From positions 1 to 64,000 of IMG/VR virus record IMGVR_UViG_3300042868_005134: 64,000 nucleotides of DNA; one strand, 5' to 3'. Shown here piece after piece: positions 1 through 61,314 of the stretch. A program made the position numbers and the translations under genes. Every line of letters begins with the position of its first letter. The first letter of the stretch is position 1. The notes beneath the pieces were generated by a model. It ran no database searches. It was given only the letters and a program-made list of their open reading frames with translations, and was not told the DNA's origin.

Positions 1-77
1 ATGCCGAACTTGCCGTCAGTAATGGCAGCAAATGCATTTGAGCATACTAACAATAAGGCTAATAATATCTTTTTCAT
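1..77 (-). CDS. Secreted protein, N-terminus only (runs off window); next gene of the curli operon
   Basis: Not in ORF track. ATG at 77 overlaps the FecR-gene stop (ATGA). Reads MKKILLALLLVCSNAFA-AITDGKFG, a Sec signal peptide. Confidence 0.75.
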   Translation of the reverse strand, partial: MKKILLALLLVCSNAFAAITDGKFG

Positions 78-1246
78 CTGAAATTCTGATTGATAACAAT
101 CTGCCCCACTGCTTTACCGCTGCTAAAGTTCCAGCTGTTAGTCTGCATGTCCTGTGTAACAACGACCTGCACCTGTGTATTGATAGGCATAACCACATTG
201 GCATAGTTTCTACTATTAGGGCTTAAACTTTCATACTGCCAACCAACCTGTTGTGTTTCGCTCTTGTCTTTCCACAATTTCTTAACATAGGGATTTTCAG
301 TGTCACTGACTGCGGCTACATCATTAACTAGTGCATCTTTATTTCCAGCTGTATCTAGTCCAATCTTGGTTCTATTCTCAGGATCTTCGTCACCCTCATT
401 GGCACTACGACCCTGCTTTGCCGAACGAGCACCACCGCCTTCTTTGTTGGCAGCTTGTTGTCGTTCTTCTTTAGCATCATCCTTGTCTTCTTTATCTTCT
501 TTCTTGTCTTTGTTATCTGACTTTTTAGCATCGCCTGTGGCCACTGCGGCAGCACGAGCAGCAGCAATAACATTTAGGCCGGTAGTTGTTCGTGGCGGAT
601 TAACCATTAAATTGTTGCCAATGGCCATACCGTTAAGAGCAACGACAACAGCAGGGCTAGGCATGCCATTTAGTGTTTCGACTAAAGTAGCTTGATAAGG
701 ACGATTCAACTTAACGATACCTGCTGGTGTTTCCACATCAATAGCACCACTGCCACAGGTAAGACCTTTAAGGTTTACATTTTGTTCTATTTCACAACGT
801 GGCATCAGCATGATCATGCTGGCGCCGGTTTCGCTCACAGCCATGACAAAGTCAGTGCCACGAACAGCAATGGCCGCTGTGGGTGTGTTGATTTTTACGT
901 TCTTGGGATCTTTGGCTATACTGCCTGACACATAACGAACTGTTCCTGCGGCTGCTTTAAGCCCTAACTTACCCGCGCCGCTTTTAGGATCATATACAAA
1001 ATCGTCAATAACAAGGCTACTGGACTCAGTAACAGTAACATTTGTATCGTCTTTAAAAACAATCTTAACCTTACCGTTCTTGGTTTCAATCTTGTCATTA
1101 ACTTCAATTACTGTGCCTTTGGCAATCTGGATTGTATCCTTGCCGCGCTTGATAATGGCAGTACCGGACGATTCAGTGACCGACCCAATATTTGCCCATG
1201 TAGAGCATGTTATTAATAAGCCGACAGCAAGGATGGCAATTTTCAT
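74..1246 (-). CDS. FecR-domain secreted protein
   Basis: Signal peptide, then FecR-like segment (DKIETKNGKVKIVFKDDTNVTVTESSSLVID...KINTPTAAIAVRGTDF); charged low-complexity linker. Confidence 0.8.
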   Translation of the reverse strand: MKIAILAVGLLITCSTWANIGSVTESSGTAIIKRGKDTIQIAKGTVIEVNDKIETKNGKVKIVFKDDTNVTVTESSSLVIDDFVYDPKSGAGKLGLKAAAGTVRYVSGSIAKDPKNVKINTPTAAIAVRGTDFVMAVSETGASMIMLMPRCEIEQNVNLKGLTCGSGAIDVETPAGIVKLNRPYQATLVETLNGMPSPAVVVALNGMAIGNNLMVNPPRTTTGLNVIAAARAAAVATGDAKKSDNKDKKEDKEDKDDAKEERQQAANKEGGGARSAKQGRSANEGDEDPENRTKIGLDTAGNKDALVNDVAAVSDTENPYVKKLWKDKSETQQVGWQYESLSPNSRNYANVVMPINTQVQVVVTQDMQTNSWNFSSGKAVGQIVINQNFR

Positions 1247-1255
1247 TGCCAGTCC

Positions 1256-2044
1256 TTAGTTCTTCTGTGTTATATTGAACATGCCACTGTTGGACACACT
1301 CTTGATGTTGATAACGCTGTCAATAGTACCAGTTTGACTCAAGGTAAAAGTATTGCTGTTGCCTGTTAAGTCCACCCAAATACTAGAACCAGCGGCACCT
1401 GTTGAGCGTTGGTTGATATCAAATGTATTAGTGTCACCTACCACTTTGATAGTTTGGCTATGCTTGTTACCAATAGCATCGATACGGAATATATTACTGT
1501 CGCCTGTGACATCAACTGCGCTCTTTAGATCATCGCCAGTACCACGGAATTGGAAATCGTTACTGTCGCCAGTGAACTTCCAATTGAAGTCAGCAGCCTT
1601 ACATCCCGATAATGCTGTAGTACCATCGCTGGCATTCCCGTAACCGCAGGCAGCATCAACTCTATTGTTGTCACCAATTTGCTGAATAGTGATGTTAACA
1701 CCTTGTCCAGTTCCGGTGGTGTTGTTTACCGCTTCTAAACTGATTTCATTGTTAACACCAATTTGACGAGTAACGATGGTTTGGTCAATACCACGTAGGT
1801 ATATAGGGCGGCCGCCACTGCCAGCAGCATTGCCTGTGCCGTCTTGTGTCATATTGACATTAGGGTTGTCACCGCTTTGGTCGATAAAAATTTTGTTGGT
1901 TGTAGCAATGGCCAATGCAGCTGTTGCGTTGGGACTAACTGTGACCATGTTTGGAATCACAGGCGCACTTGGTGCTGACACAGCGGTCTGGGCCATTACT
2001 GGAAATGCCGCTGCTAATAATATTGTTATAATTGTTTTTTTCAT
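1256..2044 (-). CDS. Curlin-like (CsgA/CsgB-type) amyloid repeat protein
   Basis: Signal peptide; repeated Q/T-x-G-x-x-N units (IDQSGDN, TQDGTGN, RQIGVNN, QQIGDNN, FTGDSN, VTGDSN, VVGDTN, LTGNSN); adjacent to csgG/csgF. Confidence 0.75.
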   Translation of the reverse strand: MKKTIITILLAAAFPVMAQTAVSAPSAPVIPNMVTVSPNATAALAIATTNKIFIDQSGDNPNVNMTQDGTGNAAGSGGRPIYLRGIDQTIVTRQIGVNNEISLEAVNNTTGTGQGVNITIQQIGDNNRVDAACGYGNASDGTTALSGCKAADFNWKFTGDSNDFQFRGTGDDLKSAVDVTGDSNIFRIDAIGNKHSQTIKVVGDTNTFDINQRSTGAAGSSIWVDLTGNSNTFTLSQTGTIDSVINIKSVSNSGMFNITQKN

Positions 2045-2072
2045 TATATTCTCCTAACCTTGTGGGTTATTT

Positions 2073-3026
2073 TTATTTTGTTGATGTGATTGGGTTTCCG
2101 TTGCCATCAACTGCGTTTGTTGTAACTTGGTTTGATCCCACAGTTTTTCCGCTATCGGACTGCTGTGGTGCGGGTGTAGCTTTGGTTGTGTCCTGGGCCT
2201 TGGTTTGTGTTTGAACCAACTCATTAGGTTTCTCCTTGAATTTCCACAAGCCGTTGCGTTCGCCTTTATTAATCAACTCGATAACTGCTGTTTCAATAGC
2301 TGAACGAAGAGCATAGTTACCTGGTTCGTTGAATGTTTGGCTAGAGTCAAACTCAAATGCTTGAGTAGCTTGGTTGAAAAACTTCAACGCTGTGGCGCCA
2401 TCGGCGGTGCTGAGCAAGTTCTTCTCCACTGTTACTGTGGTTAAGACTTCGCCAGTTTGAACACTGACTAGACGTAAACTGATAACAACCACGTCCTGTG
2501 TGTAGGCAGTCTGTGCTCCGATACCAAATATTCTAGCACCTGTTCCGCCTGTTAGTGTGTTGCTGTTGTAGTCAATGATGCCGCCTTCTAGTATAACGCC
2601 GGCCATCTGTAATGGAGGTAGCATTTTAGCGTTAGCACCGTCATAGATTTCACGAGTCTGTTTAATCATCTGACGCTCTTTTAACAAGTTGTCAAGGCCA
2701 ACACGTTCAACAACTGTGAACCATTGACGATTGCCAACTTCTTGTAAACTTTTCATTAGGTATGCTTCTGCACCCTGTGTAACTGCTGTAGAGAACAAGC
2801 TGAGTGTTGAACTTGGTTTACGCTGTCCTGTTAGGTCTTTAAATCCATACACTGCTACTGTTACTGCTGGGCCTGCTGGTGCGGGCACATTGGCAAAACT
2901 CTTGTTGATAGTGTTTGAAACTGTGGCTTCTTCTTTGATTTTTGTGTTACCCAATGGGCGTACTGTTGAGCAGCCTGCTAGAGCTACTACGGCTAGTGTG
3001 ATTAAGGATAGTTTGATTGCGTTCAT
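2073..3026 (-). CDS. csgG: Curli secretion channel lipoprotein CsgG
   Basis: Lipobox LAGC; VAVYGFKDLTGQRKP, STAVTQGA, WFTVVERVGLDNLLKERQMI, ILEGGIIDY, LRLVSVQTGEVL. Confidence 0.92.
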   Translation of the reverse strand: MNAIKLSLITLAVVALAGCSTVRPLGNTKIKEEATVSNTINKSFANVPAPAGPAVTVAVYGFKDLTGQRKPSSTLSLFSTAVTQGAEAYLMKSLQEVGNRQWFTVVERVGLDNLLKERQMIKQTREIYDGANAKMLPPLQMAGVILEGGIIDYNSNTLTGGTGARIFGIGAQTAYTQDVVVISLRLVSVQTGEVLTTVTVEKNLLSTADGATALKFFNQATQAFEFDSSQTFNEPGNYALRSAIETAVIELINKGERNGLWKFKEKPNELVQTQTKAQDTTKATPAPQQSDSGKTVGSNQVTTNAVDGNGNPITSTK

Positions 3027-3035
3027 ATGTTCTCC

Positions 3036-3515
3036 TTAAAAACTAAAACTGGCAATTGGAACTACTACTGTAGTCACTGTGCCTTTGGCATCCACCACTG
3101 TTAGTGTGACTTTGTCATTGGCTTTTGCCCAAGTAACTGTATTACCATCTAGGGCAAAAGTTCCAGTTGTTGGATTGACACAACCAGGAATTGCTGTGCC
3201 ATCTGCGGCACTACATTTGTTTGTGAATAGGTTGTTGCTTAACTGTGTGGCCAGTTGAGCATATATTTGACTTTGAAACAGACTCATAAATCTATTCAAA
3301 GGAGTGTTTAGCAGTTCTGCTTCTGCTTTGGCAATGGCAGCTTTTTTGTCTGCTTCGATAGCGTCTTTACGTGACTTTTCAATACTGTCAATCGTCAAGA
3401 CGTGGCTGCTGAATCCAATGCCGCTAAAGGCTGGATTTTTAAATTGTTGTACTAGCTCTGCTTGCGACACTGTCGCAATCGCACTTAGACTTAGTGATAC
3501 TAAGATTTTTTTCAT
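3036..3515 (-). CDS. csgF: Curli assembly factor CsgF
   Basis: Signal peptide followed by ELVQQFKNPAFSG (cf. CsgF FQFRNPNFGG); immediately upstream of csgG. Confidence 0.8.
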   Translation of the reverse strand: MKKILVSLSLSAIATVSQAELVQQFKNPAFSGIGFSSHVLTIDSIEKSRKDAIEADKKAAIAKAEAELLNTPLNRFMSLFQSQIYAQLATQLSNNLFTNKCSAADGTAIPGCVNPTTGTFALDGNTVTWAKANDKVTLTVVDAKGTVTTVVVPIASFSF

Positions 3516-4000: not shown

Positions 4001-5791
4001 TTAGCTCGAAATTATACTAGCGTTATAGGATGGTGTTGGAGTTTGTTGGGCATCGTTCCAGTTGAATCCACTTGTGATTACAACTGTACCGTTTTGGATT
4101 TTATCTAAGAAATCTGTAGGATCGCCACCTGATCCACGCATAATTGTATAATCTAGTGTAGTAGTGTTTAAAAACATAATATTTTCAACACCGTCTTCTA
4201 AATGGTAACTTACGAAAGAAATAGCAGTTACAGCTTTGTTCATTTCTTCAAAATTAACAGACTTACCGTTCCTAGCAATAGCTTTTCCTATCATACCTTC
4301 TGGAGAATCTATACCTAGTTCTTCCATGTGCTGTTTAACAGCGCCCCAGTTGTTTACAATAGACTTCATCGTGTTAAGAAACAAACCAACTGTTTCTGCA
4401 CGTGTGCTGTGCGGTAGTACTTCGTTGTTTAACGCATCGAAGCCTTTCTTATTCCAGTTATACTTTGACGCAGTTTTACCCGATGAAAGGTTAACCATGT
4501 TCGAACTGTACTGTTTAGACTTAACCGAAACAGGATTGCCTTTTTTATCTGTATTTTGGAATGTAGCAGTGGGAGGAGCGTTCTTTTGTATAAGTTCATC
4601 GATAACTTGACTCCAGATTTTCCAACCTGTTGTTGCTTTACCAATGCCCTTACTATTCAAACGGCCACCGTTCTTTTTACCTGCTTTAATCTCATACATC
4701 TCGCCATTGATTTCCAAGTCGCCGTGCGTTTCGGCTTTTCTAGTTGGGCTACCCATCATAGAAAGAGCCATTTCACCAGGACCTACAGCGCCGGATGTTG
4801 TACCTGGACTGTATTCAAAGATATTGTTTTCAGGTCTTGTAAACAAGTCGAACACATCAGCCCATTGGCCATTTAATGCGTCGCGGATGTTTCCGCGATC
4901 TTGTCCAACTACTGCTGTCATGTCGATAACTTTCTTATCAACACATGCTTTTAAGAAGTTTTTAATTTGATCAGGTGTTACGCTTGTTTCACGCTTGTTA
5001 GCCATTTCAATGATTAAGCCAAACAATGCTTGTCTTAGTGTACTAGTAAACTGCTGTGCGTTAACGATTTTTTTCTTTTGTGCAGCTTTTAACGAGCTAG
5101 TATCGATGCTATCGATAGTTTCACTATAGCCTTGTACACGATCACCTAATACTGTTAAGTAGCCAGCAATGTCTTTTAAGAACTTGTCGGCTTCTTCTTT
5201 TTGCTTCTTGTATAAGTCACGCTCTTCGACTGCCGCTTTAAAGCCTTTAAAAGTAGCTGTAGCACTTTCTAACTGTTGATTAGCAAACTGTAATCCGCGA
5301 TCACGTAATTGTGTTTCTTTTGGTGTTTCGGGCTCAACTGATTCTAAGTAACGAATTTCTTCTTTGATAGTTTCTAAGTTGGCTTTGGCTGCTTCTAACT
5401 GATCTGGAAAATGATATTCGCGTCTTCTGTTATATTTTACACCTTCTGTTACAGGCGCTTCTGGAGCAATCGGTGACACTGCTTGGGCAGGTTGTACTGA
5501 AGCAGGCACTGGTTGTACTGGGGCAGGAGCAGGCACTGGGGCAGGAGCAGGCGCTGGAGCAGACTGAGCCAGAGTAGACTTTGCCCTAAAGTATTCTGTA
5601 AACTTGCCAATACCATCAATAATCTTTTCTAGCGTATCGTTAAATTTAACTAGTCGCTGTCCGTCTTCTTCGGGTATTTTGTCAGTTACTGAAGTTAACA
5701 AGTTTACAGTATGTAAAGCATTGTTTGCTGTTAGTCGAGGGTCTGCGGCAGCTTCGTAAAGGTTGGTGATTTTAAATTCGCGAAATCTCAT
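4001..5791 (-). CDS. Large hypothetical protein with coiled coil and putative PD-(D/E)xK nuclease-like domain
   Basis: N-term MRFREF..LYE; Pro/Ala linker; GPGEMAL...HGDLEINGEMYEIKAG resembles E...D-x(n)-ExK. Confidence 0.5.
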   Translation of the reverse strand: MRFREFKITNLYEAAADPRLTANNALHTVNLLTSVTDKIPEEDGQRLVKFNDTLEKIIDGIGKFTEYFRAKSTLAQSAPAPAPAPVPAPAPVQPVPASVQPAQAVSPIAPEAPVTEGVKYNRRREYHFPDQLEAAKANLETIKEEIRYLESVEPETPKETQLRDRGLQFANQQLESATATFKGFKAAVEERDLYKKQKEEADKFLKDIAGYLTVLGDRVQGYSETIDSIDTSSLKAAQKKKIVNAQQFTSTLRQALFGLIIEMANKRETSVTPDQIKNFLKACVDKKVIDMTAVVGQDRGNIRDALNGQWADVFDLFTRPENNIFEYSPGTTSGAVGPGEMALSMMGSPTRKAETHGDLEINGEMYEIKAGKKNGGRLNSKGIGKATTGWKIWSQVIDELIQKNAPPTATFQNTDKKGNPVSVKSKQYSSNMVNLSSGKTASKYNWNKKGFDALNNEVLPHSTRAETVGLFLNTMKSIVNNWGAVKQHMEELGIDSPEGMIGKAIARNGKSVNFEEMNKAVTAISFVSYHLEDGVENIMFLNTTTLDYTIMRGSGGDPTDFLDKIQNGTVVITSGFNWNDAQQTPTPSYNASIISS

Positions 5792-5801
5792 AGTTTAATA
5801 T

Positions 5802-6482
5802 TTAGCGAATTTCAGGGAACAAGCAGTCCTGAATGAACACTTTTACATCTTCTTCGTTTAGCCCTAGACTAGCCATAACTTTAGGAGTATGCGGATTCTG
5901 CTTTTGATTCTGTGCGTAGAAGTTCTGTGCGTCTTTAGTGCTTTCCACAGTATTATTAGTTTCTGACACAGTGGCAAGGTAATGATTTAAATTCTTACGT
6001 GCCATGGCAAGAATCTGAGTTAGCTCTTCGCCTTCGCTTACATTGCCTGCTGCCACCATGTGTTTGGTAAAAATACGTTGTGCCCAATCGGGTAATGGGC
6101 GTGGCTTGTTCCATTCTAGCTTGCTAGATTCATGTTCGAACCAGTCAATCATAGGATGGGCTGGATCTCCGGCGGGACTGAAATCATGAAAACAACCGGT
6201 AATTTTATTCTTACCTGCTACTACATCAAAGCCAAATATTGGTGCTGGATTGTGTAAGTGCGGAAACACACAGCAATGCATCATCCAAAGACCCCGAGTG
6301 TCTCTAGCATCTACTATGTCAATGTGCGCTCTACGGTAACTGTCGCTTTCCCACACCAAGTTAACCCACCCTGGTTTGTTAAAACGATCCATATTTTTTT
6401 CATGTAATAACCAGCCGCTGTTGTGAAAGGCTATTTCGAAATATTCTTGTACATCTACAAGTGTGTTCCAAACTTGACTCAT
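5802..6482 (-). CDS. pcyX: Ferredoxin-dependent bilin reductase, PcyA/PcyX type
   Basis: RRAHIDIVD, WMMHCCVFP, PIFGFDVVAG, RPLPDWA, QKQNPHT. Asp at the PcyA Glu76 position suggests PcyX. Start revised to 6482 (ATGA overlap with heme oxygenase stop). Confidence 0.8.
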   Translation of the reverse strand: MSQVWNTLVDVQEYFEIAFHNSGWLLHEKNMDRFNKPGWVNLVWESDSYRRAHIDIVDARDTRGLWMMHCCVFPHLHNPAPIFGFDVVAGKNKITGCFHDFSPAGDPAHPMIDWFEHESSKLEWNKPRPLPDWAQRIFTKHMVAAGNVSEGEELTQILAMARKNLNHYLATVSETNNTVESTKDAQNFYAQNQKQNPHTPKVMASLGLNEEDVKVFIQDCLFPEIR

Positions 6483-7018
6483 AATTCTGTGTTCAACGCT
6501 TTCATCAGTTTGATAGCCCACTCGAAAGCCACTCGAGCTTCATCGCCCAGGTCATCTGTGAGTTCTGCTCTAATTGCTGCCTTAAGAGCTTCTGAATCTT
6601 TAAACTGATAAAATCTGCCTTGTCCTGGAACTTTTTTAGCAATTATTTGTCCGCCAAACAAATCGCCCATGTGTCTACAGTACAGGTGAGCCTTGACTAG
6701 ATGTTTACGATCACTGTAGTTGAGTGCTAGTAAATATTGATAGTAATCAATAGTTGCGGGCAACCATTTAAGTTGATGGTTGGGTCCGACTAGTTCAATA
6801 CAATCTTGATAAATTTTATGTGCTCGTTCAATGTCGGGTAAGTTTTTTAACATACCCTGGCTATTTGCAGCTACCTCAATGCCGTTATAAACAAGTGTCA
6901 TTTGCCAAAGATAATTGGCGTATTCTTCTGTTGAAATACTGCCTGTAACTAATTTTTTGGCAAACAGCGTTCGTTCTGCGTCCGTGTGTAAATCTTTTGT
7001 TATGTCTCGTAAGCTCAT
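6479..7018 (-). CDS. hemO: Heme oxygenase
   Basis: LRDITKDLHTDAE (proximal His) and AHLYCRHMGDLFGGQII signature. Confidence 0.9.
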   Translation of the reverse strand: MSLRDITKDLHTDAERTLFAKKLVTGSISTEEYANYLWQMTLVYNGIEVAANSQGMLKNLPDIERAHKIYQDCIELVGPNHQLKWLPATIDYYQYLLALNYSDRKHLVKAHLYCRHMGDLFGGQIIAKKVPGQGRFYQFKDSEALKAAIRAELTDDLGDEARVAFEWAIKLMKALNTEL

Positions 7019-7317
7019 TCTTCCTCCATCTTTATTTGAAGCGGAAAACCGTTGCTTCTTGCGAGTTGTGTTGACTCTACTGCTTTTGCTTCAGCAATTT
7101 CAAAACTGTACACACCAGCAACGCCGCTGCCTGTATTATGTACCTCTATTGTGATTCCTTTAGCAGTTTCCTGAGTGTGCTTGAAGATATCTGTAAGTAT
7201 ACCCACAACAAAATCCATGGGTGTTGTTTCGTCATTTAGTAGTAATACTTTCCAACGTTTAGGTTCATGAATTTTCTGTTTGATTTTTTCATCAATTTGA
7301 ATTTCGGTAGTTGACAT
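7015..7317 (-). CDS. clpS: ATP-dependent Clp protease adaptor ClpS
   Basis: WKVLLLNDETTPMDFVV, EVHNTGSGVAGVYSFEIAEAK, GFPLQ; start revised to MSTTE after GGAG. Confidence 0.92.
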   Translation of the reverse strand: MSTTEIQIDEKIKQKIHEPKRWKVLLLNDETTPMDFVVGILTDIFKHTQETAKGITIEVHNTGSGVAGVYSFEIAEAKAVESTQLARSNGFPLQIKMEEE

Positions 7318-7362
7318 AATATTCTCCAAAAGTGGGAGAGAACAACTCCCCCGGTTTTATAT

Positions 7363-7788
7363 TTACTTGATTTCGATTCTACGAGGCTTAAGAGCTTCTG
7401 GTACAAGACGGTGTATGTCAATTTGTAACATACCGTGTTCTACTTTGGCGCCGCGAACTTCCATATACTCAGCAAGAGTAAATGTCTGTTCAAAGTCACG
7501 AGCTGCCAATCCACGATGTAAGTACTCAACTCCAGCATCTGCGTTGGGTCGATTTTTAATACCACGAATTGTTAATTGGTCCTGATCCACTTCTACAGTA
7601 ACTTCTTCTTTATTGAAGCCTGCCACTGCAACTTCAATAGCATACGTATCGTCGCTATATTTTACAATATTGTGCGGAGGATAGTTACCATTTTGGTGAT
7701 GTGTCGCACTGAAGTAGCGATCAAATCCTACTAGTGCTCTACTTAGTTGGGCAAGGTCTGCCGCGTTGATAGTTCTTAGCTGTGTCAT
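7363..7788 (-). CDS. Small heat-shock protein (Hsp20/IbpA family)
   Basis: NYPPHNIVK, IEVAVAGF, EYLHRGLAARDF, GMLQIDI, KPRRIEIK. Confidence 0.93.
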   Translation of the reverse strand: MTQLRTINAADLAQLSRALVGFDRYFSATHHQNGNYPPHNIVKYSDDTYAIEVAVAGFNKEEVTVEVDQDQLTIRGIKNRPNADAGVEYLHRGLAARDFEQTFTLAEYMEVRGAKVEHGMLQIDIHRLVPEALKPRRIEIK

Positions 7789-7854: not shown

Positions 7855-9750
7855 TTAAGCCTTGTCTTTGACTTCGGTAAACTCTGCGTCTACAATGTTG
7901 TCATCGTTGGGCTTGGGTTGGCTGTCAGCTTGTTCAGCTTTGGCCTTGGCTTCCATTACTGGCATGCCCGCAGTGAATAAATCGCTTGTGGCCTTTTGAA
8001 TGGCTTCAGCGTCATCACCTTGTTTAGCATCCTCTACAGCTTTAATAGCATCTTCGATAGCAGTCTTCTGCTCGTTGGTCAACGAGCTTTCAACTTCTTT
8101 CATATCAGTGCGTAGGCTGTGTACAGATGCTTCCGCTTGGTTACGTGCCTCAATGAGTCCACGTTGTTTCTTGTCAGCTTCAGCGTTAACTTCTGCTTCC
8201 TGAACCATGCGTTCGATTTCTTCCTTGGTAAGTCCACTATCACTCTTGATAGTGATTTTGTTTTCCTTGCCTGTGTTCTTGTCCTTGGCGCTGACATGCA
8301 TGATACCGTTGGCGTCGATGTCGATAGTGACTTCAATTTGCGGTTGTCCTCTACGGCTAGGAGCGATGCCTTCTAGGTTGAACTCACCTAACATTTTATT
8401 GTATTGGAACAGTTCACGTTCACCCTGTGCTACCTTGATAGTAACAGCTGGTTGATTGTCTTCTGCTGTACTGAATGTTTGACTAGCTTTGGTTGGAATA
8501 GTTGTGTTCTTGTTAATCAACTTGGTAAACACGCCACCCATTGTTTCAATACCCAAGCTCAATGGCGTAACGTCTAACAATAACACGTCAGTGCGGTCGC
8601 CTGCTAGTACACTGCCTTGAATGGCTGCGCCTGCGGCAACTGCTTCGTCTGGGTTAACATCACGACGTGGTGCTTTGCCAAACAGTTTCTCAACTGTTTC
8701 TTGTACCTTAGGCATACGTGTCATACCACCAACAAGAATAACTTCATCAATGTCAGAGGCTGTGACGCCTGCGTCACTCATAGCTATCTTACATGGCTTA
8801 ACACTACGCTCGATGAGTTCTTCAACTAGACTTTCTAGTTTAGCACGATTGATCATGATGTTCATGTGCATCGGGCCGCCGGCATTGGCAGTAATGTATG
8901 GAAGATTAACAGCCGTTTGTTGTGTGCTAGACAATTCAATCTTGGCTTTTTCAGCTGACTCTTTCAAACGCTGTAATGCCAACACATCAGTCTTAAGATC
9001 CACACCTGTATCTTTCTTGAACTCGTCAACAAGGAAGTCCATGATACGTTGGTCGAAGTCTTCACCGCCTAGGAATGTATCGCCGTTAGTGCTTAATACT
9101 TCGATCTGTTTGTCGCCATCTACTTCCGCAATCTCAATGATTGATACATCGAATGTACCGCCACCAAGGTCGTAAACAGCAATTTTCCTATCTTTTTTAT
9201 CAGACTTATCAACACCATAACTAAGAGCTGCCGCAGTAGGCTCGTTGATAATACGCAGTACTTCCAAGCCTGCGATTCGGCCAGCATCTTTAGTTGCCTG
9301 ACGTTGACTGTCGTTAAAGTACGCAGGAACTGTGATAACGGCTTGAGTAACTTCATGTCCTAAATAGTCCTCGGCTGTCTTCTTCATCTTGCGAAGAACT
9401 TCAGCACTAATTTGTGGAGGTGCAAGTTGCTCTCCATTTGCTTCGACCCAAGCATCGCCATTGGCTGCTTCTGTAATCTTATAAGGCATAAGCCCTATGT
9501 CTTTTTGTACTGCTTCTTCTTTGAACTTTCGTCCAATGAGACGCTTGGCAGCATAAATTGTGTTTTTGGGGTTTGTAACTGCTTGACGCTTTGCGCTTGC
9601 GCCTACTAGAATTTCATTGTTAGCATAAGCAACAATACTTGGTGTAGTACGTGCGCCTTCGCTATTTTCAATTACTTTTGTAACACCGTTTTCAATAACG
9701 GCTACGCATGAATTTGTGGTACCTAAATCGATACCGATGACTTTGCTCAT
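7855..9750 (-). CDS. dnaK: Chaperone DnaK (Hsp70)
   Basis: [39 protein letters not shown]-terminal DAEFTEVKD. Confidence 0.98.
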
Positions 9751-9814: not shown

Positions 9815-10099
9815 TCAGATATTCTCTAAATTAAAGATATTGGACCATTTTTTTAGCTTGTCTATTTTAGCTAATTTTGCGGATTCTAAACTGTCTAAGT
9901 CCACAATCTGCATATCCACTAAAATGTCAATCATAGCCAATAAATCGCCAAGTTCTTCTTCTAAGTGTTGGCAATTAGTTTTAGGCTTGCCTGGCTTTAA
10001 ATTATCCAGTCCAAATCTATGACACTTGCTAACTGCTTGAATTACTTCCGCACATTCTTCTGAAAGAATGTTCATTGCTTCGCGTTCACGTTCGTTCAT
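9815..10099 (-). CDS. MazG-like nucleotide pyrophosphohydrolase
   Basis: LSEECAEVIQAVSK...LEEELGDLL acidic metal-binding motifs. Confidence 0.8.
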   Translation of the reverse strand: MNEREREAMNILSEECAEVIQAVSKCHRFGLDNLKPGKPKTNCQHLEEELGDLLAMIDILVDMQIVDLDSLESAKLAKIDKLKKWSNIFNLENI

Positions 10100-10712: not shown

Positions 10713-10742
10713 ATTATAACAGACACTGTGCTGAAATGTCAA
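10713..10742 (-). promoter_or_regulatory. Sigma70-type promoter
   Basis: TTGACA-18 nt-TATAAT with TG extension, upstream of the exonuclease gene. Confidence 0.65.
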
Positions 10743-19593: not shown

Positions 19594-20694
19594 TTATAAT
19601 GCTGGTAGCGCATCATAGTCGATGCCTTCTCCCATGACTCCAATAACATAGTTAGTGCTTTCGTTTTCTTGTAAGGCTGTTTGCTTCTTGCTAGTATCAC
19701 TATGTTTGTTGAACCAAGGAATCGGTGTGCTCTTAGGAGCAGGACTTTGATATTTGATACCAATATCTTTAAGTGCGCCAACTGCTGTGTAGTCTACAAA
19801 GTCTTTAAGAATGTTAGCGTTAAGACCAATAACTGGACCTTTGTTAAACAAATAGTCCGCCCACTGTTTTTCTTCACGTATCACATCTAGATATAACGCA
19901 TACACTTCGCGTTCACATTCTTTTGCGGCGGTGGTGAAACGAGAGTCTTCTTTGACCACTTGATTGATGATGTACGCTGTCCAGCCTTTGTGTAACAGTT
20001 CGTCTTGTAGAATCAAACTGATAATATTTCCGTTACCAATAAAGATCTTGTTCTCAACCATGGCCAAGCTGGTGGCAAATGAAACCATGAAGCGAAATGC
20101 TTCTAATGCGTAGCTGGCGTGTAGGGCCATGTAAACTGCTCTAACATGTTCTTGTTCAATGACTGCTTGGCCCAATTCTTTTTGACAGTTAATCTTGTGT
20201 AATTCATCATAGTACTTGCCCACACTACTTGCCATGTCTACAATTTCTTTAGTGTCATGAATTGTGTTAAACACATCCTTGGGTACATTGTAGATGTTGC
20301 GAATGATATGACTGTAGCTTTTGCTGTGAATGTTAGTTTCAAAAAAGCCCCAGTTGTACATCAACGCTTCAAGTTCGGGCAGTGAACACACAGGAGTAAA
20401 CACCTGTGTTGGCCCTCTACCTTGCAAACTATCAAGTGCTGTTTGACGTAGTAGGTTGCTAGTAAAAATATGTTTAACGGCATCACTTGCATCCTTAAAA
20501 TCGTTTGCGTCTTTGCTAAGACTAATCTCTTCGGGTTGCCAAAAGAATCCACGGGCAGTACTATCAAAGTCCGCAATCTTTTTATATTTTACTTCTTCGA
20601 ATCGTTGGATAGTAACAGGACCTGCTGGATCTAGAAACATTTTACGATTAAGGTAGTCTGTTTTTGTTGATAAGTTATATTGTGCTTTACTCAT
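19594..20694 (-). CDS. nrdB: Ribonucleotide reductase class Ia beta subunit
   Basis: FFWQPEEI, LDSLQGR, ETNIHSKSY (radical Tyr), LEAFRF, DELLH, QENESTNY. Confidence 0.95.
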   Translation of the reverse strand: MSKAQYNLSTKTDYLNRKMFLDPAGPVTIQRFEEVKYKKIADFDSTARGFFWQPEEISLSKDANDFKDASDAVKHIFTSNLLRQTALDSLQGRGPTQVFTPVCSLPELEALMYNWGFFETNIHSKSYSHIIRNIYNVPKDVFNTIHDTKEIVDMASSVGKYYDELHKINCQKELGQAVIEQEHVRAVYMALHASYALEAFRFMVSFATSLAMVENKIFIGNGNIISLILQDELLHKGWTAYIINQVVKEDSRFTTAAKECEREVYALYLDVIREEKQWADYLFNKGPVIGLNANILKDFVDYTAVGALKDIGIKYQSPAPKSTPIPWFNKHSDTSKKQTALQENESTNYVIGVMGEGIDYDALPAL

Positions 20695-21345
20695 TTAATA
20701 TTTTCCTGATGCAAGTACTATCTTGCAAATGTGTTCTAATCTTTCTATATGCTCGTATGCTCGCCACGGTGTTGTATCGATAGCAACAACTCCGTGTCCT
20801 TTAATACCAACTATGTCGTAGGCAATATTTCCACGGTCATCCAATTCTAACCGATAATGGCATTGATCCGCAAGCTCTTGGCTGATGGGTTTTACATCAC
20901 CTACATTTGGTGCTACTTTAGTATAACGATTGAGTTCTGGAAACGCTGAACTGACTGTGCTCAAATCAATTCCGGCATGCATGGCCGCAATACAGTAAGT
21001 GGGGTGAACGTGTACTACTACACGAACTTCACCGGTGTGCTGTCCCATTTCTTTTTGTAGGCCAAAGTGTAAGGGTAGTTCTCCACTGGGCTTTAAGTTG
21101 GCACTGATTTCAGTATAGGGTAGTTCTTTGCTCGCATGATAAGGACGAGGAGGTTGGTCATAGTATCCTGTCTCAATGCCAATCTTTTTAAACTGGTCTG
21201 GTTGTAGAGTCTGCTTACGCACACCACTGGGTGTGATGTAAAAGTGGTCACGGTCATGATGTCGTATGCTTACGTTACCATCACGACTGGTAATCCAATT
21301 ACGCTTGTAAGCGTCTACCATTATGTCACATATAGTTTCTAACAC
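20695..21345 (-). CDS. Class II aldolase/adducin family protein
   Basis: SRDGNVS, ITPSG, PSGELPLH, VVHVHP, GHGVVA. Confidence 0.85.
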   Translation of the reverse strand: MLETICDIMVDAYKRNWITSRDGNVSIRHHDRDHFYITPSGVRKQTLQPDQFKKIGIETGYYDQPPRPYHASKELPYTEISANLKPSGELPLHFGLQKEMGQHTGEVRVVVHVHPTYCIAAMHAGIDLSTVSSAFPELNRYTKVAPNVGDVKPISQELADQCHYRLELDDRGNIAYDIVGIKGHGVVAIDTTPWRAYEHIERLEHICKIVLASGKY

Positions 21346-21543
21346 TTATTCATGTCCTCTGTGAATTAATTGATTAACCATATTGAGATCAAACTCCAAC
21401 TTAGAAATTTGATCTCGTGCCTGTTGATACTCTATGCTATGAACATCACCGTCATTGGTAACAATGTTCAAATACATATTTGAGGCACGGTCGTGCGCTT
21501 CTTTGAGATCGCGTTCTAATAATACTCTTCTATCTTTTAACAT
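21346..21543 (-). CDS. Hypothetical protein
   Basis: 65-aa ORF filling the gap in the nrd operon. Confidence 0.6.
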   Translation of the reverse strand: MLKDRRVLLERDLKEAHDRASNMYLNIVTNDGDVHSIEYQQARDQISKLEFDLNMVNQLIHRGHE

Positions 21544-21552
21544 ATCGATTCC

Positions 21553-23874
21553 TTAGAGCTTGCAAGATTCACAGTCTTCTTCGTCATCAAAGTTAATAGG
21601 CTCTAACATTGTTGGCGCAATTTCAGCAGCCATCTTACTGCCTGCTTTGTTAATCAAACTATAGTAGAAAGTTTTTAAGCCCCACATGTGTGACTGCATT
21701 AAATTCTTAGCAATCAACGTAGTTGGCACTTTGCGATCCGCGAAGTGCGCTGGGTTGTAGAATGTGTTAGTGCTGATTGATTGGTCCACATAGGCTGCGA
21801 TCACCGCACTAGTCTTTAAATAGCCTTCACAATCTTTTTGTTCCCACATGAGTTGATATTTGTTCTTTAACTTATGGTACTCAGGTACAACCTGTACAAA
21901 TGATCCTGCCTTACTTTCTTTAACGCTAATCAAGCTCATGGGCATTTCTATGCCATTGGTGCTGTTAATGACAACACTTGAGCTTTCAACTGGAGCAACT
22001 GCCATTTGAGTAGCATTACGAACACCATGTTCTTTCATTTGACCACGTAGTGTTTCCCAATCTAGTTCCGGAGCAAAGTCTGTTAGTTCATTAGCACCTT
22101 TAGCACGAGTCTCCCATGGGAAGGTTCCTTTACCATATCTTGTGTGGTCGCTGCCTTCACAACGACCACGTTCCTTGGCCAGTTCAACTGACGCTTCAGT
22201 TAGATAGAACGCTTGATGTTCCATCCACGATTTAACTTCAGCTAACGAATCTTTCTCTCCATACTTCAAACTACGTTTGGCATGCCAGTAGGCTAGATTA
22301 GTAATACCAATACCCAGGGGGCGAATTTCATCATTGCTCAACTTACTTTGAATACTCAGGAAGTCCTGGTAATCAAGGATATTGTTAAGACTGCGGTGAA
22401 GTATACGGCAAGCCCTACGCATATCTTCTGGATTACGGAAAGCTCCCCAGTTAATACTACCCAACGTGCATAAAGCAATGCGACCATCAGCATCATCGAG
22501 ACGTTTAAAAGACTTAGTAGGTAATAGGATTTCACAGCAAAGGTTACTCTGGTAAATTGTATGATACTCTGGATCAAAAGGTCCTTGGTTCATGACGTTG
22601 TCAATGAACACTAGATAGATACGTCCTGTATCTGTACGTTCTTTTAAGATGCCACTCTTGAATACTTCTTCAGCACTCATTGTTTTCTTACGAAGTCCTG
22701 ATTGCTTTTCGTACTTAACATACAGCTCTTCGAATCGTTCAGTATTTTGATAGAACGCTTCGTACAAGTCTGGCACTTCGTTAGGATCAAAGAATGTTAT
22801 TTGTTCTTTGTTTTTAAATCGTCTCCAGAAGAAAGCACTAAGCACAACCCCATAATCCATATGACGGACTCGGGTTTCTTCTGTTCCTTGGTTGTTCTTA
22901 AGTACAATAAGATCATCAAACTGATGATGCCAAATAGGATAAAATACAGTAGCACTTGCATTACGAATACCTCCCTGTGAGCATGAGCGCAAATCACCGA
23001 ACCATTTTTTCAGGAATGGTATCATACCTGTGTGCATAATCTCACCGCCTCGGATGGGACTACCTAACGGACGTAGCCGCCCGATCTCCAAACCAATGCC
23101 GGCACGTTTGCTGGCATACTTGGCCATCATCTCGCCCGAAGCAAAGATACTGTCTAGATCATCATCCGAACGAATGAGTACGCAAGAGCTAAACTGTTTA
23201 GTAGGAGTACCAAGGCCAGCCAATACAGGAGTAGCAAGAGTAAAAAGTCCATCGCTTGCGGCGTTGTAATATTCTTTGATATAGCGCATACGAGCACTGT
23301 TAGGTTCTTCTGTATGGAACACAGTAGCGGCCGCCACCATATATCTAATTTGTGGAGTTTCATATGTTTGTTTTGTACTGCGGTTCTTAACCAAGTACTT
23401 CTCTATTAATTGTTCAATTGCGGCGTACCCGTACTCTTCATCTTTGTCATGCTGAAGCATGTCATCCATTCGACTCCAATCTTCTTCAGTATACCATACA
23501 AGTAATTCTGGAGTATATAAACCAATCTCAACATTTTTCTTTACAACTTCGTAAAGGTGTGGTACTTCGTAGCTGCCGTAAACATCTTTGCGAAGCATAC
23601 TGAGTCGTTGCTTGCCTGCTACGTATTGATAGTTTGTATGTCCAACGTCAGGATTATTTTCCACATCAATAAGATCCACTATGGCTCTTAGTGTGATTTC
23701 GTCAATTTCTTGTGTGGTGATACCATCATAAAAGTGCGGCTGACTTTTGATCTCAATCATGCTTTGACTAACATCTGCTATACCTTTACAAACTTTGGCA
23801 ATCTGAGTTTGCCATTTTTCAATCATTAGGTATTCTTTTTTGCCGCTTCTTTTTATTACAGTTATGTTCGTCAT
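21553..23874 (-). CDS. nrdA: Ribonucleotide reductase class Ia alpha subunit
   Basis: ATP-cone start VIKRSG, FSSCVL, SQGGIR, SNLCCEI, GLKTFYY, C-terminal CESC. Confidence 0.96.
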   Translation of the reverse strand: MTNITVIKRSGKKEYLMIEKWQTQIAKVCKGIADVSQSMIEIKSQPHFYDGITTQEIDEITLRAIVDLIDVENNPDVGHTNYQYVAGKQRLSMLRKDVYGSYEVPHLYEVVKKNVEIGLYTPELLVWYTEEDWSRMDDMLQHDKDEEYGYAAIEQLIEKYLVKNRSTKQTYETPQIRYMVAAATVFHTEEPNSARMRYIKEYYNAASDGLFTLATPVLAGLGTPTKQFSSCVLIRSDDDLDSIFASGEMMAKYASKRAGIGLEIGRLRPLGSPIRGGEIMHTGMIPFLKKWFGDLRSCSQGGIRNASATVFYPIWHHQFDDLIVLKNNQGTEETRVRHMDYGVVLSAFFWRRFKNKEQITFFDPNEVPDLYEAFYQNTERFEELYVKYEKQSGLRKKTMSAEEVFKSGILKERTDTGRIYLVFIDNVMNQGPFDPEYHTIYQSNLCCEILLPTKSFKRLDDADGRIALCTLGSINWGAFRNPEDMRRACRILHRSLNNILDYQDFLSIQSKLSNDEIRPLGIGITNLAYWHAKRSLKYGEKDSLAEVKSWMEHQAFYLTEASVELAKERGRCEGSDHTRYGKGTFPWETRAKGANELTDFAPELDWETLRGQMKEHGVRNATQMAVAPVESSSVVINSTNGIEMPMSLISVKESKAGSFVQVVPEYHKLKNKYQLMWEQKDCEGYLKTSAVIAAYVDQSISTNTFYNPAHFADRKVPTTLIAKNLMQSHMWGLKTFYYSLINKAGSKMAAEIAPTMLEPINFDDEEDCESCKL

Positions 23875-53625: not shown

Positions 53626-61314
<7,689 letters not shown>

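What the first reader, a model, noticed from the sequence alone, without database searches (positions are those of the whole stretch)
5802..7317. clpS-hemO-pcyX translationally coupled operon in a phage with no photosynthesis genes in view
Seen: three genes joined by ATGA overlaps. Known: heme oxygenase converts heme to biliverdin, Fe and CO; PcyX-type enzymes make phycoerythrobilin; HemO-PcyX pairs occur in phages of non-cyanobacterial hosts with unknown purpose. Inference: the main aim may be iron release, with the reductase removing inhibitory biliverdin, or bilin supply to re-tune host bilin sensors. Coupling to the N-degron adaptor ClpS hints at targeted degradation of host hemoproteins.
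Basis: partly seen in the sequence, partly recalled or inferred. Interest (0 to 1): 0.62.

Follow-up and report, generated by a model that had tools for sequence, protein, structure and literature searches.

The report
Phage heme-to-bilin genes beside ClpS
A 383-kb lake-water jumbo phage really does carry clpS, a heme oxygenase and a PcyX-type bilin reductase joined by ATGA overlaps, but comparison with relatives suggests ClpS belongs to the phage's own Clp protease and chaperone set, and that the already published heme-to-bilin gene pair simply landed next to it.

Summary
On the minus strand lie clpS (7317..7015), hemO (7018..6479) and an FDBR gene (6482..5802), and both junctions are ATGA.

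- **FDBR type:** it is PcyX-type. It scores 3e-66 against PDB 5OWG and 2e-12 against PcyA, and Asp55, His69, Cys71 and Asp86 are all present.
- **No photosynthesis genes:** the whole 383-kb phage genome has no reaction-centre, phycobiliprotein, Fer2 ferredoxin, ALAS, pmoC or GAF genes.
- **Own Clp machinery:** the genome encodes a ClpA-like ATPase, ClpP, DnaK, DnaJ, Hsp20 and peptide deformylase.
- **Linkage within the clade:** 72 of the 80 closest IMG/VR loci keep the order Hsp20-ClpS-HO-PcyX, usually preceded by DnaK.
- **Linkage is dispensable:**
  - Extra genes are inserted at either junction in 16 loci.
  - Three PcyX lineages nested inside the clade hold HO-PcyX away from ClpS. In three contigs the pair lies 6-41 kb from an intact Hsp20-ClpS pair.
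  - ClpS identity tracks Hsp20 (rho 0.51) and not HO (0.10).
  - Distant jumbo phages (PA5oct, Atu_ph07, Phosso) have Hsp20-ClpS with no HO.
- **ATGA overlaps are common:** they make up 17% of same-strand junctions in this genome.

HemO-PcyX cassettes in freshwater jumbo phages are already published. ClpS-directed hemoprotein degradation remains an untested speculation. Interest is modest.

The parts
7015..7317 (-). clpS: N-degron adaptor of ClpAP, 100 aa
   Evidence: Pfam ClpS 5.7e-28. NCBIfam ClpS models score 96 bits, below their cut-offs. PDB best hits are Agrobacterium ClpS2 4YJM at 1.5e-18, then Caulobacter and E. coli ClpS. The pocket motif reads LNDETTPM, and N28, D29, T32, P33 and H60 are invariant in 72 relatives. 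Predicted to bind the phage ClpA N-domain: score 0.90, best control 0.00.
6479..7018 (-). hemO: canonical heme oxygenase, 179 aa. Its start overlaps the clpS stop (ATGA), and it has its own GGAGG Shine-Dalgarno inside the clpS 3' end.
   Evidence: PF01126 4.7e-19. PDB best hit is HmuO 1IW0 at 1e-9, with the proximal His (His11) and the GDLFGGQ distal-helix motif aligned. His11, G118, D119, L120, G122 and G123 are invariant in 78 relatives. The sequence was read.
5802..6482 (-). PcyX-type ferredoxin-dependent bilin reductase, 226 aa. Its start overlaps the hemO stop (ATGA), and no Shine-Dalgarno is visible upstream.
   Evidence: PF05996 8.1e-16. PcyX 5OWG scores 3.2e-66 and 226 bits, against PcyA at 2.4e-12 and 50 bits. 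Identity to pelagiphage Mosig is 49.8%. D55, H69, C71 and D86 are invariant in 79 relatives.
7363..7788 (-). Hsp20 small heat-shock protein: the gene that ClpS travels with
   Evidence: PF00011 2.6e-17. Hsp20-ClpS adjacency is seen in 72 of 80 relatives, in the unlinked contigs G001-G003, and in PA5oct, Atu_ph07 and Phosso. Identity matrices correlate at rho 0.51.
7855..9750 (-). DnaK (Hsp70), 631 aa
   Evidence: PF00012 1.4e-256. The nearest bacterial homologues are Limnohabitans, Rubrivivax, Rhodoferax and Polynucleobacter at 69-71%.
9815..10099 (-). MazG-like nucleotide pyrophosphohydrolase, upstream member of the conserved block
   Evidence: PF03819 7.5e-7. Conserved upstream of DnaK in many relatives.
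10713..10742 (-). Candidate promoter of the block: TTGACA, 18-nt spacer, TATAAT, with a TG extension
   Evidence: 12 of 12 consensus match. This is a pattern match only.
7323..7350 (-). Short GC hairpin in the 45-nt Hsp20-clpS spacer; at most a weak attenuator
   Evidence: Terminator-like hits. The fold is -15.2 kcal/mol with z = -1.0, not better than shuffles.
4001..5791 (-). 596-aa ORF of unknown function, 10 nt downstream of the FDBR. It sits in a variable slot and is not part of the conserved module.
   Evidence: No Pfam or NCBIfam hit. It is present at this position in only a few relatives, at 23-39% identity apart from the identical L003.

Best explanation
The window is the start of a complete 383-kb jumbo phage from lake water. 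Gene content suggests it infects a Gram-negative heterotroph, probably a freshwater member of the Burkholderiales.

Two units with separate functions and separate histories lie head to tail inside one long transcription unit.

**Unit 1: proteostasis genes (DnaK-Hsp20-ClpS).** ClpS is the N-degron adaptor for a ClpA-like unfoldase and a ClpP peptidase that the phage encodes elsewhere in its genome, together with DnaJ and peptide deformylase. ClpS docks on the ClpA N-domain and delivers proteins with bulky hydrophobic N-termini for degradation.

**Unit 2: the known viral two-gene cassette hemO-pcyX.** The oxygenase opens host heme to biliverdin IXalpha, Fe2+ and CO. The PcyX-type reductase uses host ferredoxin (the phage has none of the Fer2 type) to reduce biliverdin by four electrons, most likely to phycoerythrobilin.

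In a host without phycobilisomes, the likeliest payoff is heme breakdown for iron. The phage encodes iron enzymes such as NrdB and peptide deformylase. The reductase would keep the oxygenase turning over by removing its product.

The cassette entered the slot directly downstream of ClpS in an ancestor of this phage clade. That slot also accepts other auxiliary genes. The ATGA overlaps are ordinary phage gene packing, with PcyX translation probably depending on hemO translation.

**Shown:** gene identities, conserved catalytic residues, synteny and its breaks, and the co-variation pattern.

**Inferred:** the product (PEB), the iron purpose, the host, and the claim that adjacency to ClpS is historical rather than mechanistic.
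For: **Gene identities and residues**

**Phage-owned Clp system**
- ClpP scores 253 bits and passes the NCBIfam PRK00277 cut-off.
- The 754-aa ATPase carries Clp_N, two AAA modules and a D2-small domain. Its best NCBIfam match is ClpA TIGR02639, full length, 878 bits.
- DnaJ and peptide deformylase lie next to it.
- ClpA and ClpP are present in all five large relatives of 215-400 kb.
- The ClpS to ClpA N-domain model scores 0.90, with a best control of 0.00. That mark was reached by 51 of 78 solved complexes and 2 of 108 mismatches. The runs agree on at least 95% of contacts, and partner pLDDT is at least 86.

**ClpS goes with Hsp20**
- The two are adjacent in 72 of 80 relatives.
- They stay adjacent in contigs where HO-PcyX lies 6, 37 and 41 kb away.
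- They are also paired in PA5oct, Atu_ph07 and Phosso, which have no HO.
- Spearman rho of pairwise identities is 0.51 for Hsp20-ClpS and 0.10 for ClpS-HO.

**The cassette is independent**
- Mosig and cyanophages have HO and an FDBR without ClpS. Among 50,697 GenBank phage records, the ClpS-hit and FDBR-hit sets do not overlap.
- Unlinked loci nest at three places inside the ClpS-linked PcyX tree.

**The slot accepts other genes**
- An 86-aa ORF, a class II aldolase and a Trp halogenase are inserted at the junctions in relatives.

**Other points**
- ATGA overlaps make up 17% of junctions.
- Iron sinks: NrdA and NrdB and peptide deformylase.
- Published context: hemO-pcyX in freshwater jumbo phages (bioRxiv 10.1101/2020.02.13.942896; PMC11480375), and the iron-supply idea (PMC11480375).
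- Contigs from RNA libraries of relatives cover HO plus ClpS, and bridge the HO|PcyX junction.
Against: - The ClpS|HO junction is tight in 56 of 72 loci: a 4-nt overlap in 48, and -1 to +3 nt in 8. This holds across ClpS identities down to 44% and across very different HO alleles. That is more persistence than a neutral neighbour might show, and it fits selection for co-expression.
- ClpS and an FDBR co-occur only in this clade, so a clade-specific functional tie cannot be excluded.
- Where the linkage is broken, ClpS is still in the genome, so it could act in trans.
- Low correlations involving PcyX may partly reflect its narrow identity range.
- Only the best 80 of 335 IMG/VR relatives were seen.
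- Product, electron donor and host are all untested.
- The freshwater phage CB_2 has a 'PcyX-like' enzyme that turned out to be a PcyA (PMC11480375).
Confidence: 0.6

Rival explanations
1. Functional coupling. The phage ClpS-ClpA-ClpP machine degrades host hemoproteins, or the heme-synthesis enzyme GluTR. The co-translated oxygenase and reductase then dispose of the released heme, detoxifying it and recovering iron. On this view clpS-hemO-pcyX is a true functional operon.
For: - The junction is tight in 56 of 72 loci, despite divergent HO alleles.
- The hemO Shine-Dalgarno is built into the last clpS codons.
- ClpS and an FDBR co-occur only in this clade.
- There is a precedent for ClpS acting on tetrapyrrole synthesis. 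Plastid ClpS1/ClpF deliver GluTR to Clp, and bacterial GluTR is turned over by Clp and Lon (PMC6597238).
Against: - Linkage was broken at least three times, and in three of those contigs both units are kept.
- Other genes are inserted at the junctions in 16 loci.
- ClpS history follows Hsp20, not HO.
- Hsp20-ClpS occurs without HO in distant jumbo phages, and HO-PcyX without ClpS in Mosig.
- ATGA overlaps are common.
- ClpS recognises N-terminal residues, not heme, and nothing here points to hemoprotein substrates.
Confidence: 0.15
2. The bilin, not the iron, is the point. The phage makes phycoerythrobilin (or phycocyanobilin), or drains biliverdin, to alter a host bilin-binding sensor or regulator such as a bacteriophytochrome or a bilin-binding globin.
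For: - All four PcyX catalytic residues are invariant in 79 sequences, and PcyX is the most conserved gene of the block (65-99% pairwise). This argues for selection on the reductase itself.
- The CB_2 phage FDBR can load a phytochrome, and the authors raise bilin-binding globins as one possibility (PMC11480375).
- The DnaK affinities point to Burkholderiales. By my own knowledge, that order includes bacteriophytochrome-bearing photoheterotrophs.
Against: - The phage encodes no GAF or phycobiliprotein-like protein.
- The host is not identified.
- No sensor gene is linked to the cassette.
Confidence: 0.15
3. The reductase is a PcyA in function, making phycocyanobilin like the freshwater phage CB_2 enzyme, rather than a phycoerythrobilin synthase. 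This concerns the product only and is compatible with any of the readings above.
For: This is a freshwater origin, and the one freshwater 'PcyX-like' enzyme tested proved to be a true PcyA (PMC11480375). Identity to the characterised PcyX is only about 50%.
Against: - The CB_2 enzyme lacks Asp55. Here Asp55 is present and invariant.
- The score against PcyX is 226 bits, against 50 bits for PcyA.
- It falls below the NCBIfam PcyA equivalog cut-off.
Confidence: 0.2

Closest known systems
Viral hemO-pcyX cassette: PcyX_EBK42635 (PDB 5OWG), pelagiphage Mosig, and freshwater jumbo phages TP6_1, BML_S_1 and CB_1
   Same: A heme oxygenase is immediately followed by an overlapping PcyX-clade FDBR in a phage of a non-cyanobacterial host. 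Identity to 5OWG and Mosig is about 50%, and Asp55, His69, Cys71 and Asp86 are kept. Adjacent ho1 and pcyX-like genes have been reported in large freshwater phages (bioRxiv 10.1101/2020.02.13.942896), and the cassette has been analysed in PMC11480375.
   Different: Here the cassette directly follows clpS within a chaperone block. No 5-ALA synthase gene is present, unlike the three-gene cassettes of PMC11480375. Mosig instead has 2OG-Fe(II) oxygenases and a ferrochelatase upstream. Neither paper mentions ClpS in its main text, and the supplements of PMC11480375 hold no Clp, DnaK or chaperone term.
ClpS genes of jumbo phages (PA5oct, Atu_ph07, Phosso, SCTP-2), noted by Iyer et al. 2021, PMC7824862
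   Same: A ClpS of about 100 aa lies next to or near a small heat-shock protein. It is interpreted as an adaptor that feeds targets to ClpAP.
   Different: Those phages have no HO or FDBR beside ClpS. PA5oct has an Fe/Mn superoxide dismutase there. Iyer et al. picture ClpS using the host ClpAP, whereas this phage and its relatives also encode a ClpA-like ATPase and ClpP themselves.
Cyanophage ho1 with pebS or pcyA (with petF)
   Same: A phage-borne oxygenase plus a four-electron FDBR that makes a bilin from host heme.
   Different: The cyanophage FDBRs are only 23-27% identical. Those phages serve phycobilisome-bearing hosts, and by my own knowledge many carry photosystem and ferredoxin genes. 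This genome has none.
Bacterial clpS-clpA operon and the ClpAPS N-degron pathway
   Same: The ClpS fold and pocket residues are kept, as is the ClpA domain order. The predicted ClpS to ClpA N-domain interface uses ClpS residues 70-77 and 80.
   Different: In this phage clpS is about 270 kb from the clpA-like gene and about 327 kb from clpP on the linear record. All three score below NCBIfam equivalog cut-offs, although ClpP passes a subfamily model.

Membership tests
PcyX (phage phycoerythrobilin synthase clade of FDBRs) | FDBR domain, with sequence closer to PcyX than to PcyA, PebS, PebA or PebB | tested here: met
   PF05996 8.1e-16. 5OWG scores 3.2e-66 against 2.4e-12 for the best PcyA, and no PebS, PebA or PebB chain appears at E <= 0.01.
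PcyX (phage phycoerythrobilin synthase clade of FDBRs) | The PcyX-specific catalytic Asp55 (PMC11480375), plus His69, Cys71 and Asp86. The latter three rest on my own recollection of the PcyX structure paper. | tested here: met
   All four align to 5OWG, whose chain numbering is offset by +8. All four are invariant in 79 relatives.
PcyX (phage phycoerythrobilin synthase clade of FDBRs) | Converts biliverdin IXalpha to phycoerythrobilin via 15,16-dihydrobiliverdin | not testable with these tools
   Needs an enzyme assay. The CB_2 precedent shows that sequence placement alone can mislead (PMC11480375).
PcyX (phage phycoerythrobilin synthase clade of FDBRs) | Encoded next to a heme oxygenase in a phage genome | tested here: met
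PcyA (phycocyanobilin:ferredoxin oxidoreductase, NCBIfam NF002760) | Score above the equivalog cut-off | tested here: not met
   82 bits against a cut-off of 206.
Canonical heme oxygenase (PF01126) | HO fold, with a proximal His and a glycine-rich distal helix (GDLxGGQ) | tested here: met
   The protein is short (179 aa), and the Pfam match covers profile positions 6-159 of 204. Activity was not tested.
ClpS N-degron adaptor (PF02617) | ClpS domain with N-degron pocket residues. By my own knowledge these correspond to E. coli N34, D35, T38, M40 and H66. | tested here: met
   Pfam scores 97 bits. N28, D29, T32 and H60 are invariant, and M34 is Met in 59 of 72 and Ile or Val in the rest. The residues matching E. 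coli D36 and Y37 are Glu and Thr here.
ClpS N-degron adaptor (PF02617) | Binds the N-domain of a ClpA- or ClpC-type unfoldase | tested here: inconclusive
   The model with the phage ClpA N-domain passes: 0.90 against a best control of 0.00. That mark was reached by 51 of 78 solved complexes and 2 of 108 mismatches. Similar complexes have been solved, so the pass may come from the model's memory. It is a prediction, not a measurement.
   Linked in 72 of 80 close loci. Unlinked in three nested lineages. Absent from Mosig, the cyanophages, PA5oct, Atu_ph07, Phosso and SCTP-2.
   There is no convincing terminator or promoter between them. An RNA-library contig of a relative spans HO plus ClpS (6628-7404, 94% identity), and others bridge the HO|PcyX junction. 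These are assembled contigs of relatives, and DNA carry-over is not excluded.

The most novel reading that the evidence does not exclude
In this clade of lake jumbo phages, the phage-encoded ClpS-ClpA-ClpP N-degron protease and the heme oxygenase-PcyX pair act as one programme. ClpS selects host hemoproteins or heme-synthesis enzymes, ClpAP unfolds and degrades them, and the co-translated oxygenase and reductase strip the freed heme for iron while making a bilin. This would be the first case of a virus pairing a targeted protease adaptor with cofactor salvage.
Probability: 0.1. Interest if true: 0.75.

Novelty: new member of a known kind. Interest (0 to 1): 0.3.

Why it matters
Why phages of non-photosynthetic bacteria carry heme-to-bilin genes is an open question (PMC11480375). 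This locus does not answer it, but it narrows the field in four ways.

- The cassette is common in a large clade of 345-400-kb lake phages: 335 IMG/VR relatives were found.
- The reductase is under strong constraint.
- The oxygenase alleles are swapped freely.
- The phage supplies no Fer2 ferredoxin, no ALA synthase and no bilin-binding protein.

The locus also shows that the tempting link to ClpS is most simply explained by position.

A by-product may be of more interest than the original finding. These phages carry a full ClpS, ClpA-like and ClpP set together with DnaK, DnaJ, Hsp20 and peptide deformylase. That amounts to a largely self-contained protein quality-control and degradation system in a virus.

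Tried and rejected
- **Nucleotide search of GenBank phages:** a megablast of 5 kb around the locus found nothing.
- **tRNAs:** a scan of the window found none.
- **Genes that would tie the cassette to a pathway:** whole-genome searches were all negative. They covered Photo_RC, Fer2, AmoC/pmoC, Aminotran_1_2 (ALAS), phycobiliprotein (only a 13-bit sub-threshold hit inside a tail-fibre ORF) and GAF.
- **HO downstream of ClpS in other phages:** I checked whether the genes following ClpS in Phosso and PA5oct were unannotated heme oxygenases. They are not. The Phosso gene has no Pfam hit, and the PA5oct gene is an Fe/Mn superoxide dismutase.
- **A conserved partner of the cassette:** the 181-aa gene that follows the cassette in the unlinked loci (G000 81115-81660) has no Pfam family. 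The 596-aa ORF downstream of the FDBR has no Pfam or NCBIfam family and is not conserved in place.
- **Terminator between Hsp20 and clpS:** the hairpin is no more stable than shuffled sequence.
- **Literature:** ClpS is not mentioned in the main text of the two key papers on phage hemO-pcyX, and the supplements of PMC11480375 hold no Clp, DnaK or chaperone term. A search for papers linking ClpS and heme oxygenase gave only plant plastid proteomics. The paper I checked for the PcyX residue numbers did not contain them.
- **Not attempted:**
  - an FDBR tree with PebS, PebA, PebB and pre-PcyA references, because no referenced sequences were in hand
  - the remaining 255 IMG/VR relatives
  - a ClpS-HO binding prediction, because the single job went to ClpS-ClpA
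Full report
**1. What is in the sequence**

Three ORFs lie on the minus strand.
- 7317..7015 encodes a 100-aa ClpS (Pfam 5.7e-28).
- 7018..6479 encodes a 179-aa heme oxygenase (PF01126, 4.7e-19).
- 6482..5802 encodes a 226-aa ferredoxin-dependent bilin reductase (PF05996, 8.1e-16).

Read on the coding strand, both junctions are ATGA, at 7018-7015 and 6482-6479.

The last clpS codons spell GGAGGAAGA just before the hemO ATG, so hemO has its own ribosome-binding site. No such site precedes the reductase ATG, so its translation probably depends on termination of hemO. This is read directly, and the dependence is an inference.

**2. How special is the overlap?**

Not very.
- With a simple ORF model of the whole genome, 58 of 348 adjacent same-strand junctions (17%) can be read as ATGA overlaps, and 86 overlap by 4 or 1 nt.
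- The trio sits in a run of about 25 co-directional genes.
- The next ORF begins 10 nt after the reductase stop.
- The only strong promoter-like site nearby is a perfect TTGACA-18-TATAAT at 10742-10713, upstream of an exoribonuclease, MazG, DnaK and Hsp20.
- The hairpin between Hsp20 and clpS is no more stable than shuffled sequence.

**3. The genome**

The window is the first 64 kb of an IMG/VR virus record of 383,411 bp, rated 100% complete, with 40.7% GC.
- Collagen-like tail fibres up to 2,562 aa and class I ribonucleotide reductase confirm a tailed jumbo phage.
- Near-identical DNA occurs in lake-water metagenomes of many studies.
- The genome has no reaction-centre protein, no Fer2 ferredoxin, no phycobiliprotein above threshold, no ALA synthase-type aminotransferase, no pmoC and no GAF domain.

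Host clues are indirect.
- The window holds CsgG, CsgF and a curlin-repeat protein, which implies an outer membrane.
- It also holds a TctC/Bug-type receptor.
- The nearest bacterial relatives of its DnaK are Limnohabitans, Rubrivivax, Rhodoferax and Polynucleobacter at 69-71%.
- I infer a freshwater Burkholderiales host with low to moderate confidence.

**4. The enzymes**

The reductase belongs to the PcyX clade.
- Its best solved relative is PcyX_EBK42635 (5OWG) at 3.2e-66 and 226 bits. The best PcyA scores 2.4e-12 and 50 bits.
- It fails NCBIfam's PcyA equivalog cut-off, at 82 against 206 bits.
- Its best hit among isolated phages is pelagiphage Mosig at 49.8%.
- Its numbering coincides with native PcyX numbering. 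Asp55, His69, Cys71 and Asp86 are present and are invariant in 79 related sequences.
- PMC11480375 singles out Asp55 as the residue missing from the CB_2 phage enzyme, which makes PCB.
- I therefore predict PEB as the product, with about 70% confidence.

The oxygenase aligns with HmuO and HO-1. It keeps the proximal His (His11) and the GDLxGGQ distal helix, and these are invariant in 78 relatives.

ClpS aligns with Agrobacterium ClpS2, Caulobacter ClpS and E. coli ClpS, and keeps the pocket Asn, Asp, Thr, Met and His.

**5. ClpS has its own partners in this phage**

- The genome encodes a true ClpP at 334593-335183 (253 bits, above the NCBIfam PRK00277 cut-off).
- It also encodes a 754-aa ATPase at 276936-279200. 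This has a Clp_N domain, two AAA modules and a D2-small domain. Its best and full-length NCBIfam match is ClpA, at 878 bits, below the equivalog cut-off of 993.
- Peptide deformylase and DnaJ flank the ATPase.
- All five large relatives examined (215-400 kb) also have both genes.
- A complex model of phage ClpS with residues 1-150 of the phage ATPase scored 0.90, with a best control of 0.00. That mark was reached by 51 of 78 solved complexes and 2 of 108 mismatches. The runs agree on at least 95% of contacts, and partner pLDDT is at least 86.
- Similar complexes are solved, so this shows likeness rather than proof of binding.

**6. Is the clpS link to hemO-pcyX conserved?**

A scan of IMG/VR found 335 relatives of the reductase, of which the best 80 (65-100% identity) were fetched.

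Within the clade the link mostly holds.
- 72 loci have Hsp20-ClpS-HO-PcyX in this order. DnaK lies upstream in nearly all of them, MazG is often upstream of that, and CsgF-CsgG are often downstream.
- The ClpS|HO junction is a 4-nt overlap in 48 loci and -1 to +3 nt in 8.
- It is 51-76 nt in 5 loci. In 11 loci it holds an extra 86-aa ORF.
- The HO|PcyX junction is interrupted by a class II aldolase in four loci and by a tryptophan halogenase in one.

Eight loci lack the link.
- In two contig types (G001, G003), PcyX precedes a different HO allele. The pair lies 37-41 kb from an intact Hsp20-ClpS pair.
- In a third (G002), HO-PcyX lies about 6 kb upstream of Hsp20-ClpS.
- On a PcyX tree rooted on Mosig, these unlinked loci fall at three separate places inside the linked diversity (quick search, SH-aLRT support only).

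Co-variation points the same way.
- Across 57 distinct loci, pairwise identities of Hsp20 and ClpS correlate at rho 0.51.
- ClpS-HO gives 0.10 and HO-PcyX gives 0.07.
- HO alleles range from 35 to 100% identity (median 46%), while PcyX stays at 65-99%.
- The block is therefore mosaic, with recombination breakpoints on both sides of HO.

Outside the clade the link is absent.
- The isolated jumbo phages PA5oct, Atu_ph07 and Phosso have a small heat-shock gene next to or one gene from ClpS, and no HO. SCTP-2 has ClpX near ClpS.
- Mosig and the cyanophages have HO and an FDBR but no ClpS hit.
- In 50,697 GenBank phage records, the two hit lists do not overlap.

**7. Interpretation**

The simplest account has three parts.
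- Hsp20-ClpS is an old proteostasis pair of jumbo phages.
- hemO-pcyX is a mobile two-gene cassette.
- In the ancestor of this lake clade, the cassette settled in the slot downstream of ClpS, which also takes up other auxiliary genes.

The persistence of the tight junction is the main point in favour of something more, and I give the functional-coupling reading about 15%.

For the cassette itself I favour heme breakdown for iron, with the reductase removing biliverdin.
- The phage encodes di-iron NrdB and peptide deformylase.
- The idea is already in the literature (PMC11480375).
- The strong constraint on PcyX, compared with the loosely kept HO alleles, keeps a bilin-centred role alive.
- None of this is shown.

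**8. Expression**

Assembled contigs from four freshwater RNA libraries lie on the region.
- One 839-nt contig covers 6628-7404 (HO plus ClpS) at 94% identity.
- Others bridge the HO|PcyX junction.
- Near-identical pieces cover Hsp20 and DnaK.

This suggests that this phage or its relatives are transcribed in lakes. Contigs cannot prove a single transcript or exclude DNA carry-over.

**9. Novelty**

- Adjacent ho1 and pcyX-like genes in large freshwater phages were reported in 2020 (bioRxiv 10.1101/2020.02.13.942896).
- The cassette was analysed biochemically in 2024 (PMC11480375).
- Phage ClpS was noted in 2021 (PMC7824862).
- Neither of the two papers on phage hemO-pcyX mentions ClpS in its main text. 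The ClpS adjacency and the clade-wide ClpS, ClpA-like and ClpP set therefore look unreported within the library I could search.
- The finding is a new member of a known kind with a new but probably incidental neighbour.

Noticed in passing
window 74-3515 (-): Curli (type VIII secretion) genes in a phage: CsgG (2073-3026, 6e-51), CsgF (3036-3515), a curlin-repeat/CsgB-like protein (1256-2044) and a FecR-domain protein (74-1246). CsgF-CsgG recur downstream of the PcyX block in most relatives at 33-92% identity.
   Followed up: partly
G000 276936-280513 and 334593-336073 (outside the window; loci L087, L088): The phage encodes a ClpA-like ATPase (754 aa) flanked by peptide deformylase and DnaJ. 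It also has a true ClpP next to an SPFH/Band 7 protein. With ClpS, DnaK and Hsp20 this is a nearly complete protein quality-control set. ClpA and ClpP are present in all five large relatives checked.
   Followed up: partly
L003-L082, HO gene: Heme oxygenase alleles are far more diverse (35-100% pairwise, median 46%) than the flanking PcyX (65-99%, median 72%). They are uncorrelated with either neighbour, which suggests repeated allele replacement at a fixed position.
   Followed up: partly
L032 5180-5440; L008 5372-6004; L043 4506-6053: Relatives carry extra genes inside the module. An 86-aa ORF with no family lies between ClpS and HO (11 loci). A class II aldolase lies between HO and PcyX (4 loci). 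A tryptophan halogenase (7e-84) lies there in one locus. A paralogous class II aldolase sits at window 20695-21345.
   Followed up: partly
window 38195-39157 (-): A TctC/Bug-family periplasmic solute receptor (2e-22) is encoded by the phage. By my own knowledge this family is greatly expanded in Burkholderiales, which fits the DnaK affinities (Limnohabitans and others at 69-71%).
   Followed up: no
window 10713-10742 (-): A perfect extended sigma-70 consensus (TTGACA, 18 nt, TG-TATAAT) lies ahead of the exoribonuclease-MazG-DnaK-Hsp20-ClpS-HO-PcyX run. This hints that the block is read by host RNA polymerase.
   Followed up: no
window 19594-23874 (-): Class I ribonucleotide reductase NrdA (21553-23874) and di-iron NrdB (19594-20694). 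These are possible consumers of iron freed by the oxygenase.
   Followed up: no
L091 4330-4878 (Pseudomonas phage PA5oct): In PA5oct the gene right after ClpS, annotated as hypothetical, is an Fe/Mn superoxide dismutase (Sod_Fe_C 1.2e-21). A metalloenzyme gene again follows Hsp20-ClpS.
   Followed up: no
window 53626-61314 (-): A 2,562-aa collagen-like tail-fibre protein, with further collagen-like fibre genes at 49678-51012 and 61338-63179.
   Followed up: no
G000 1-100 and 380638: The first 100 bases or so of the record recur about 2.8 kb before its end. A second CsgG-like ORF lies at 382719-383402. This may be a terminal or assembly-related repeat.
   Followed up: no
L021, L034, L042, L044, L074 (DnaK): DnaK matches are split into two or three frames in several relatives. 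These are frameshifts, sequencing errors or decaying copies.
   Followed up: no
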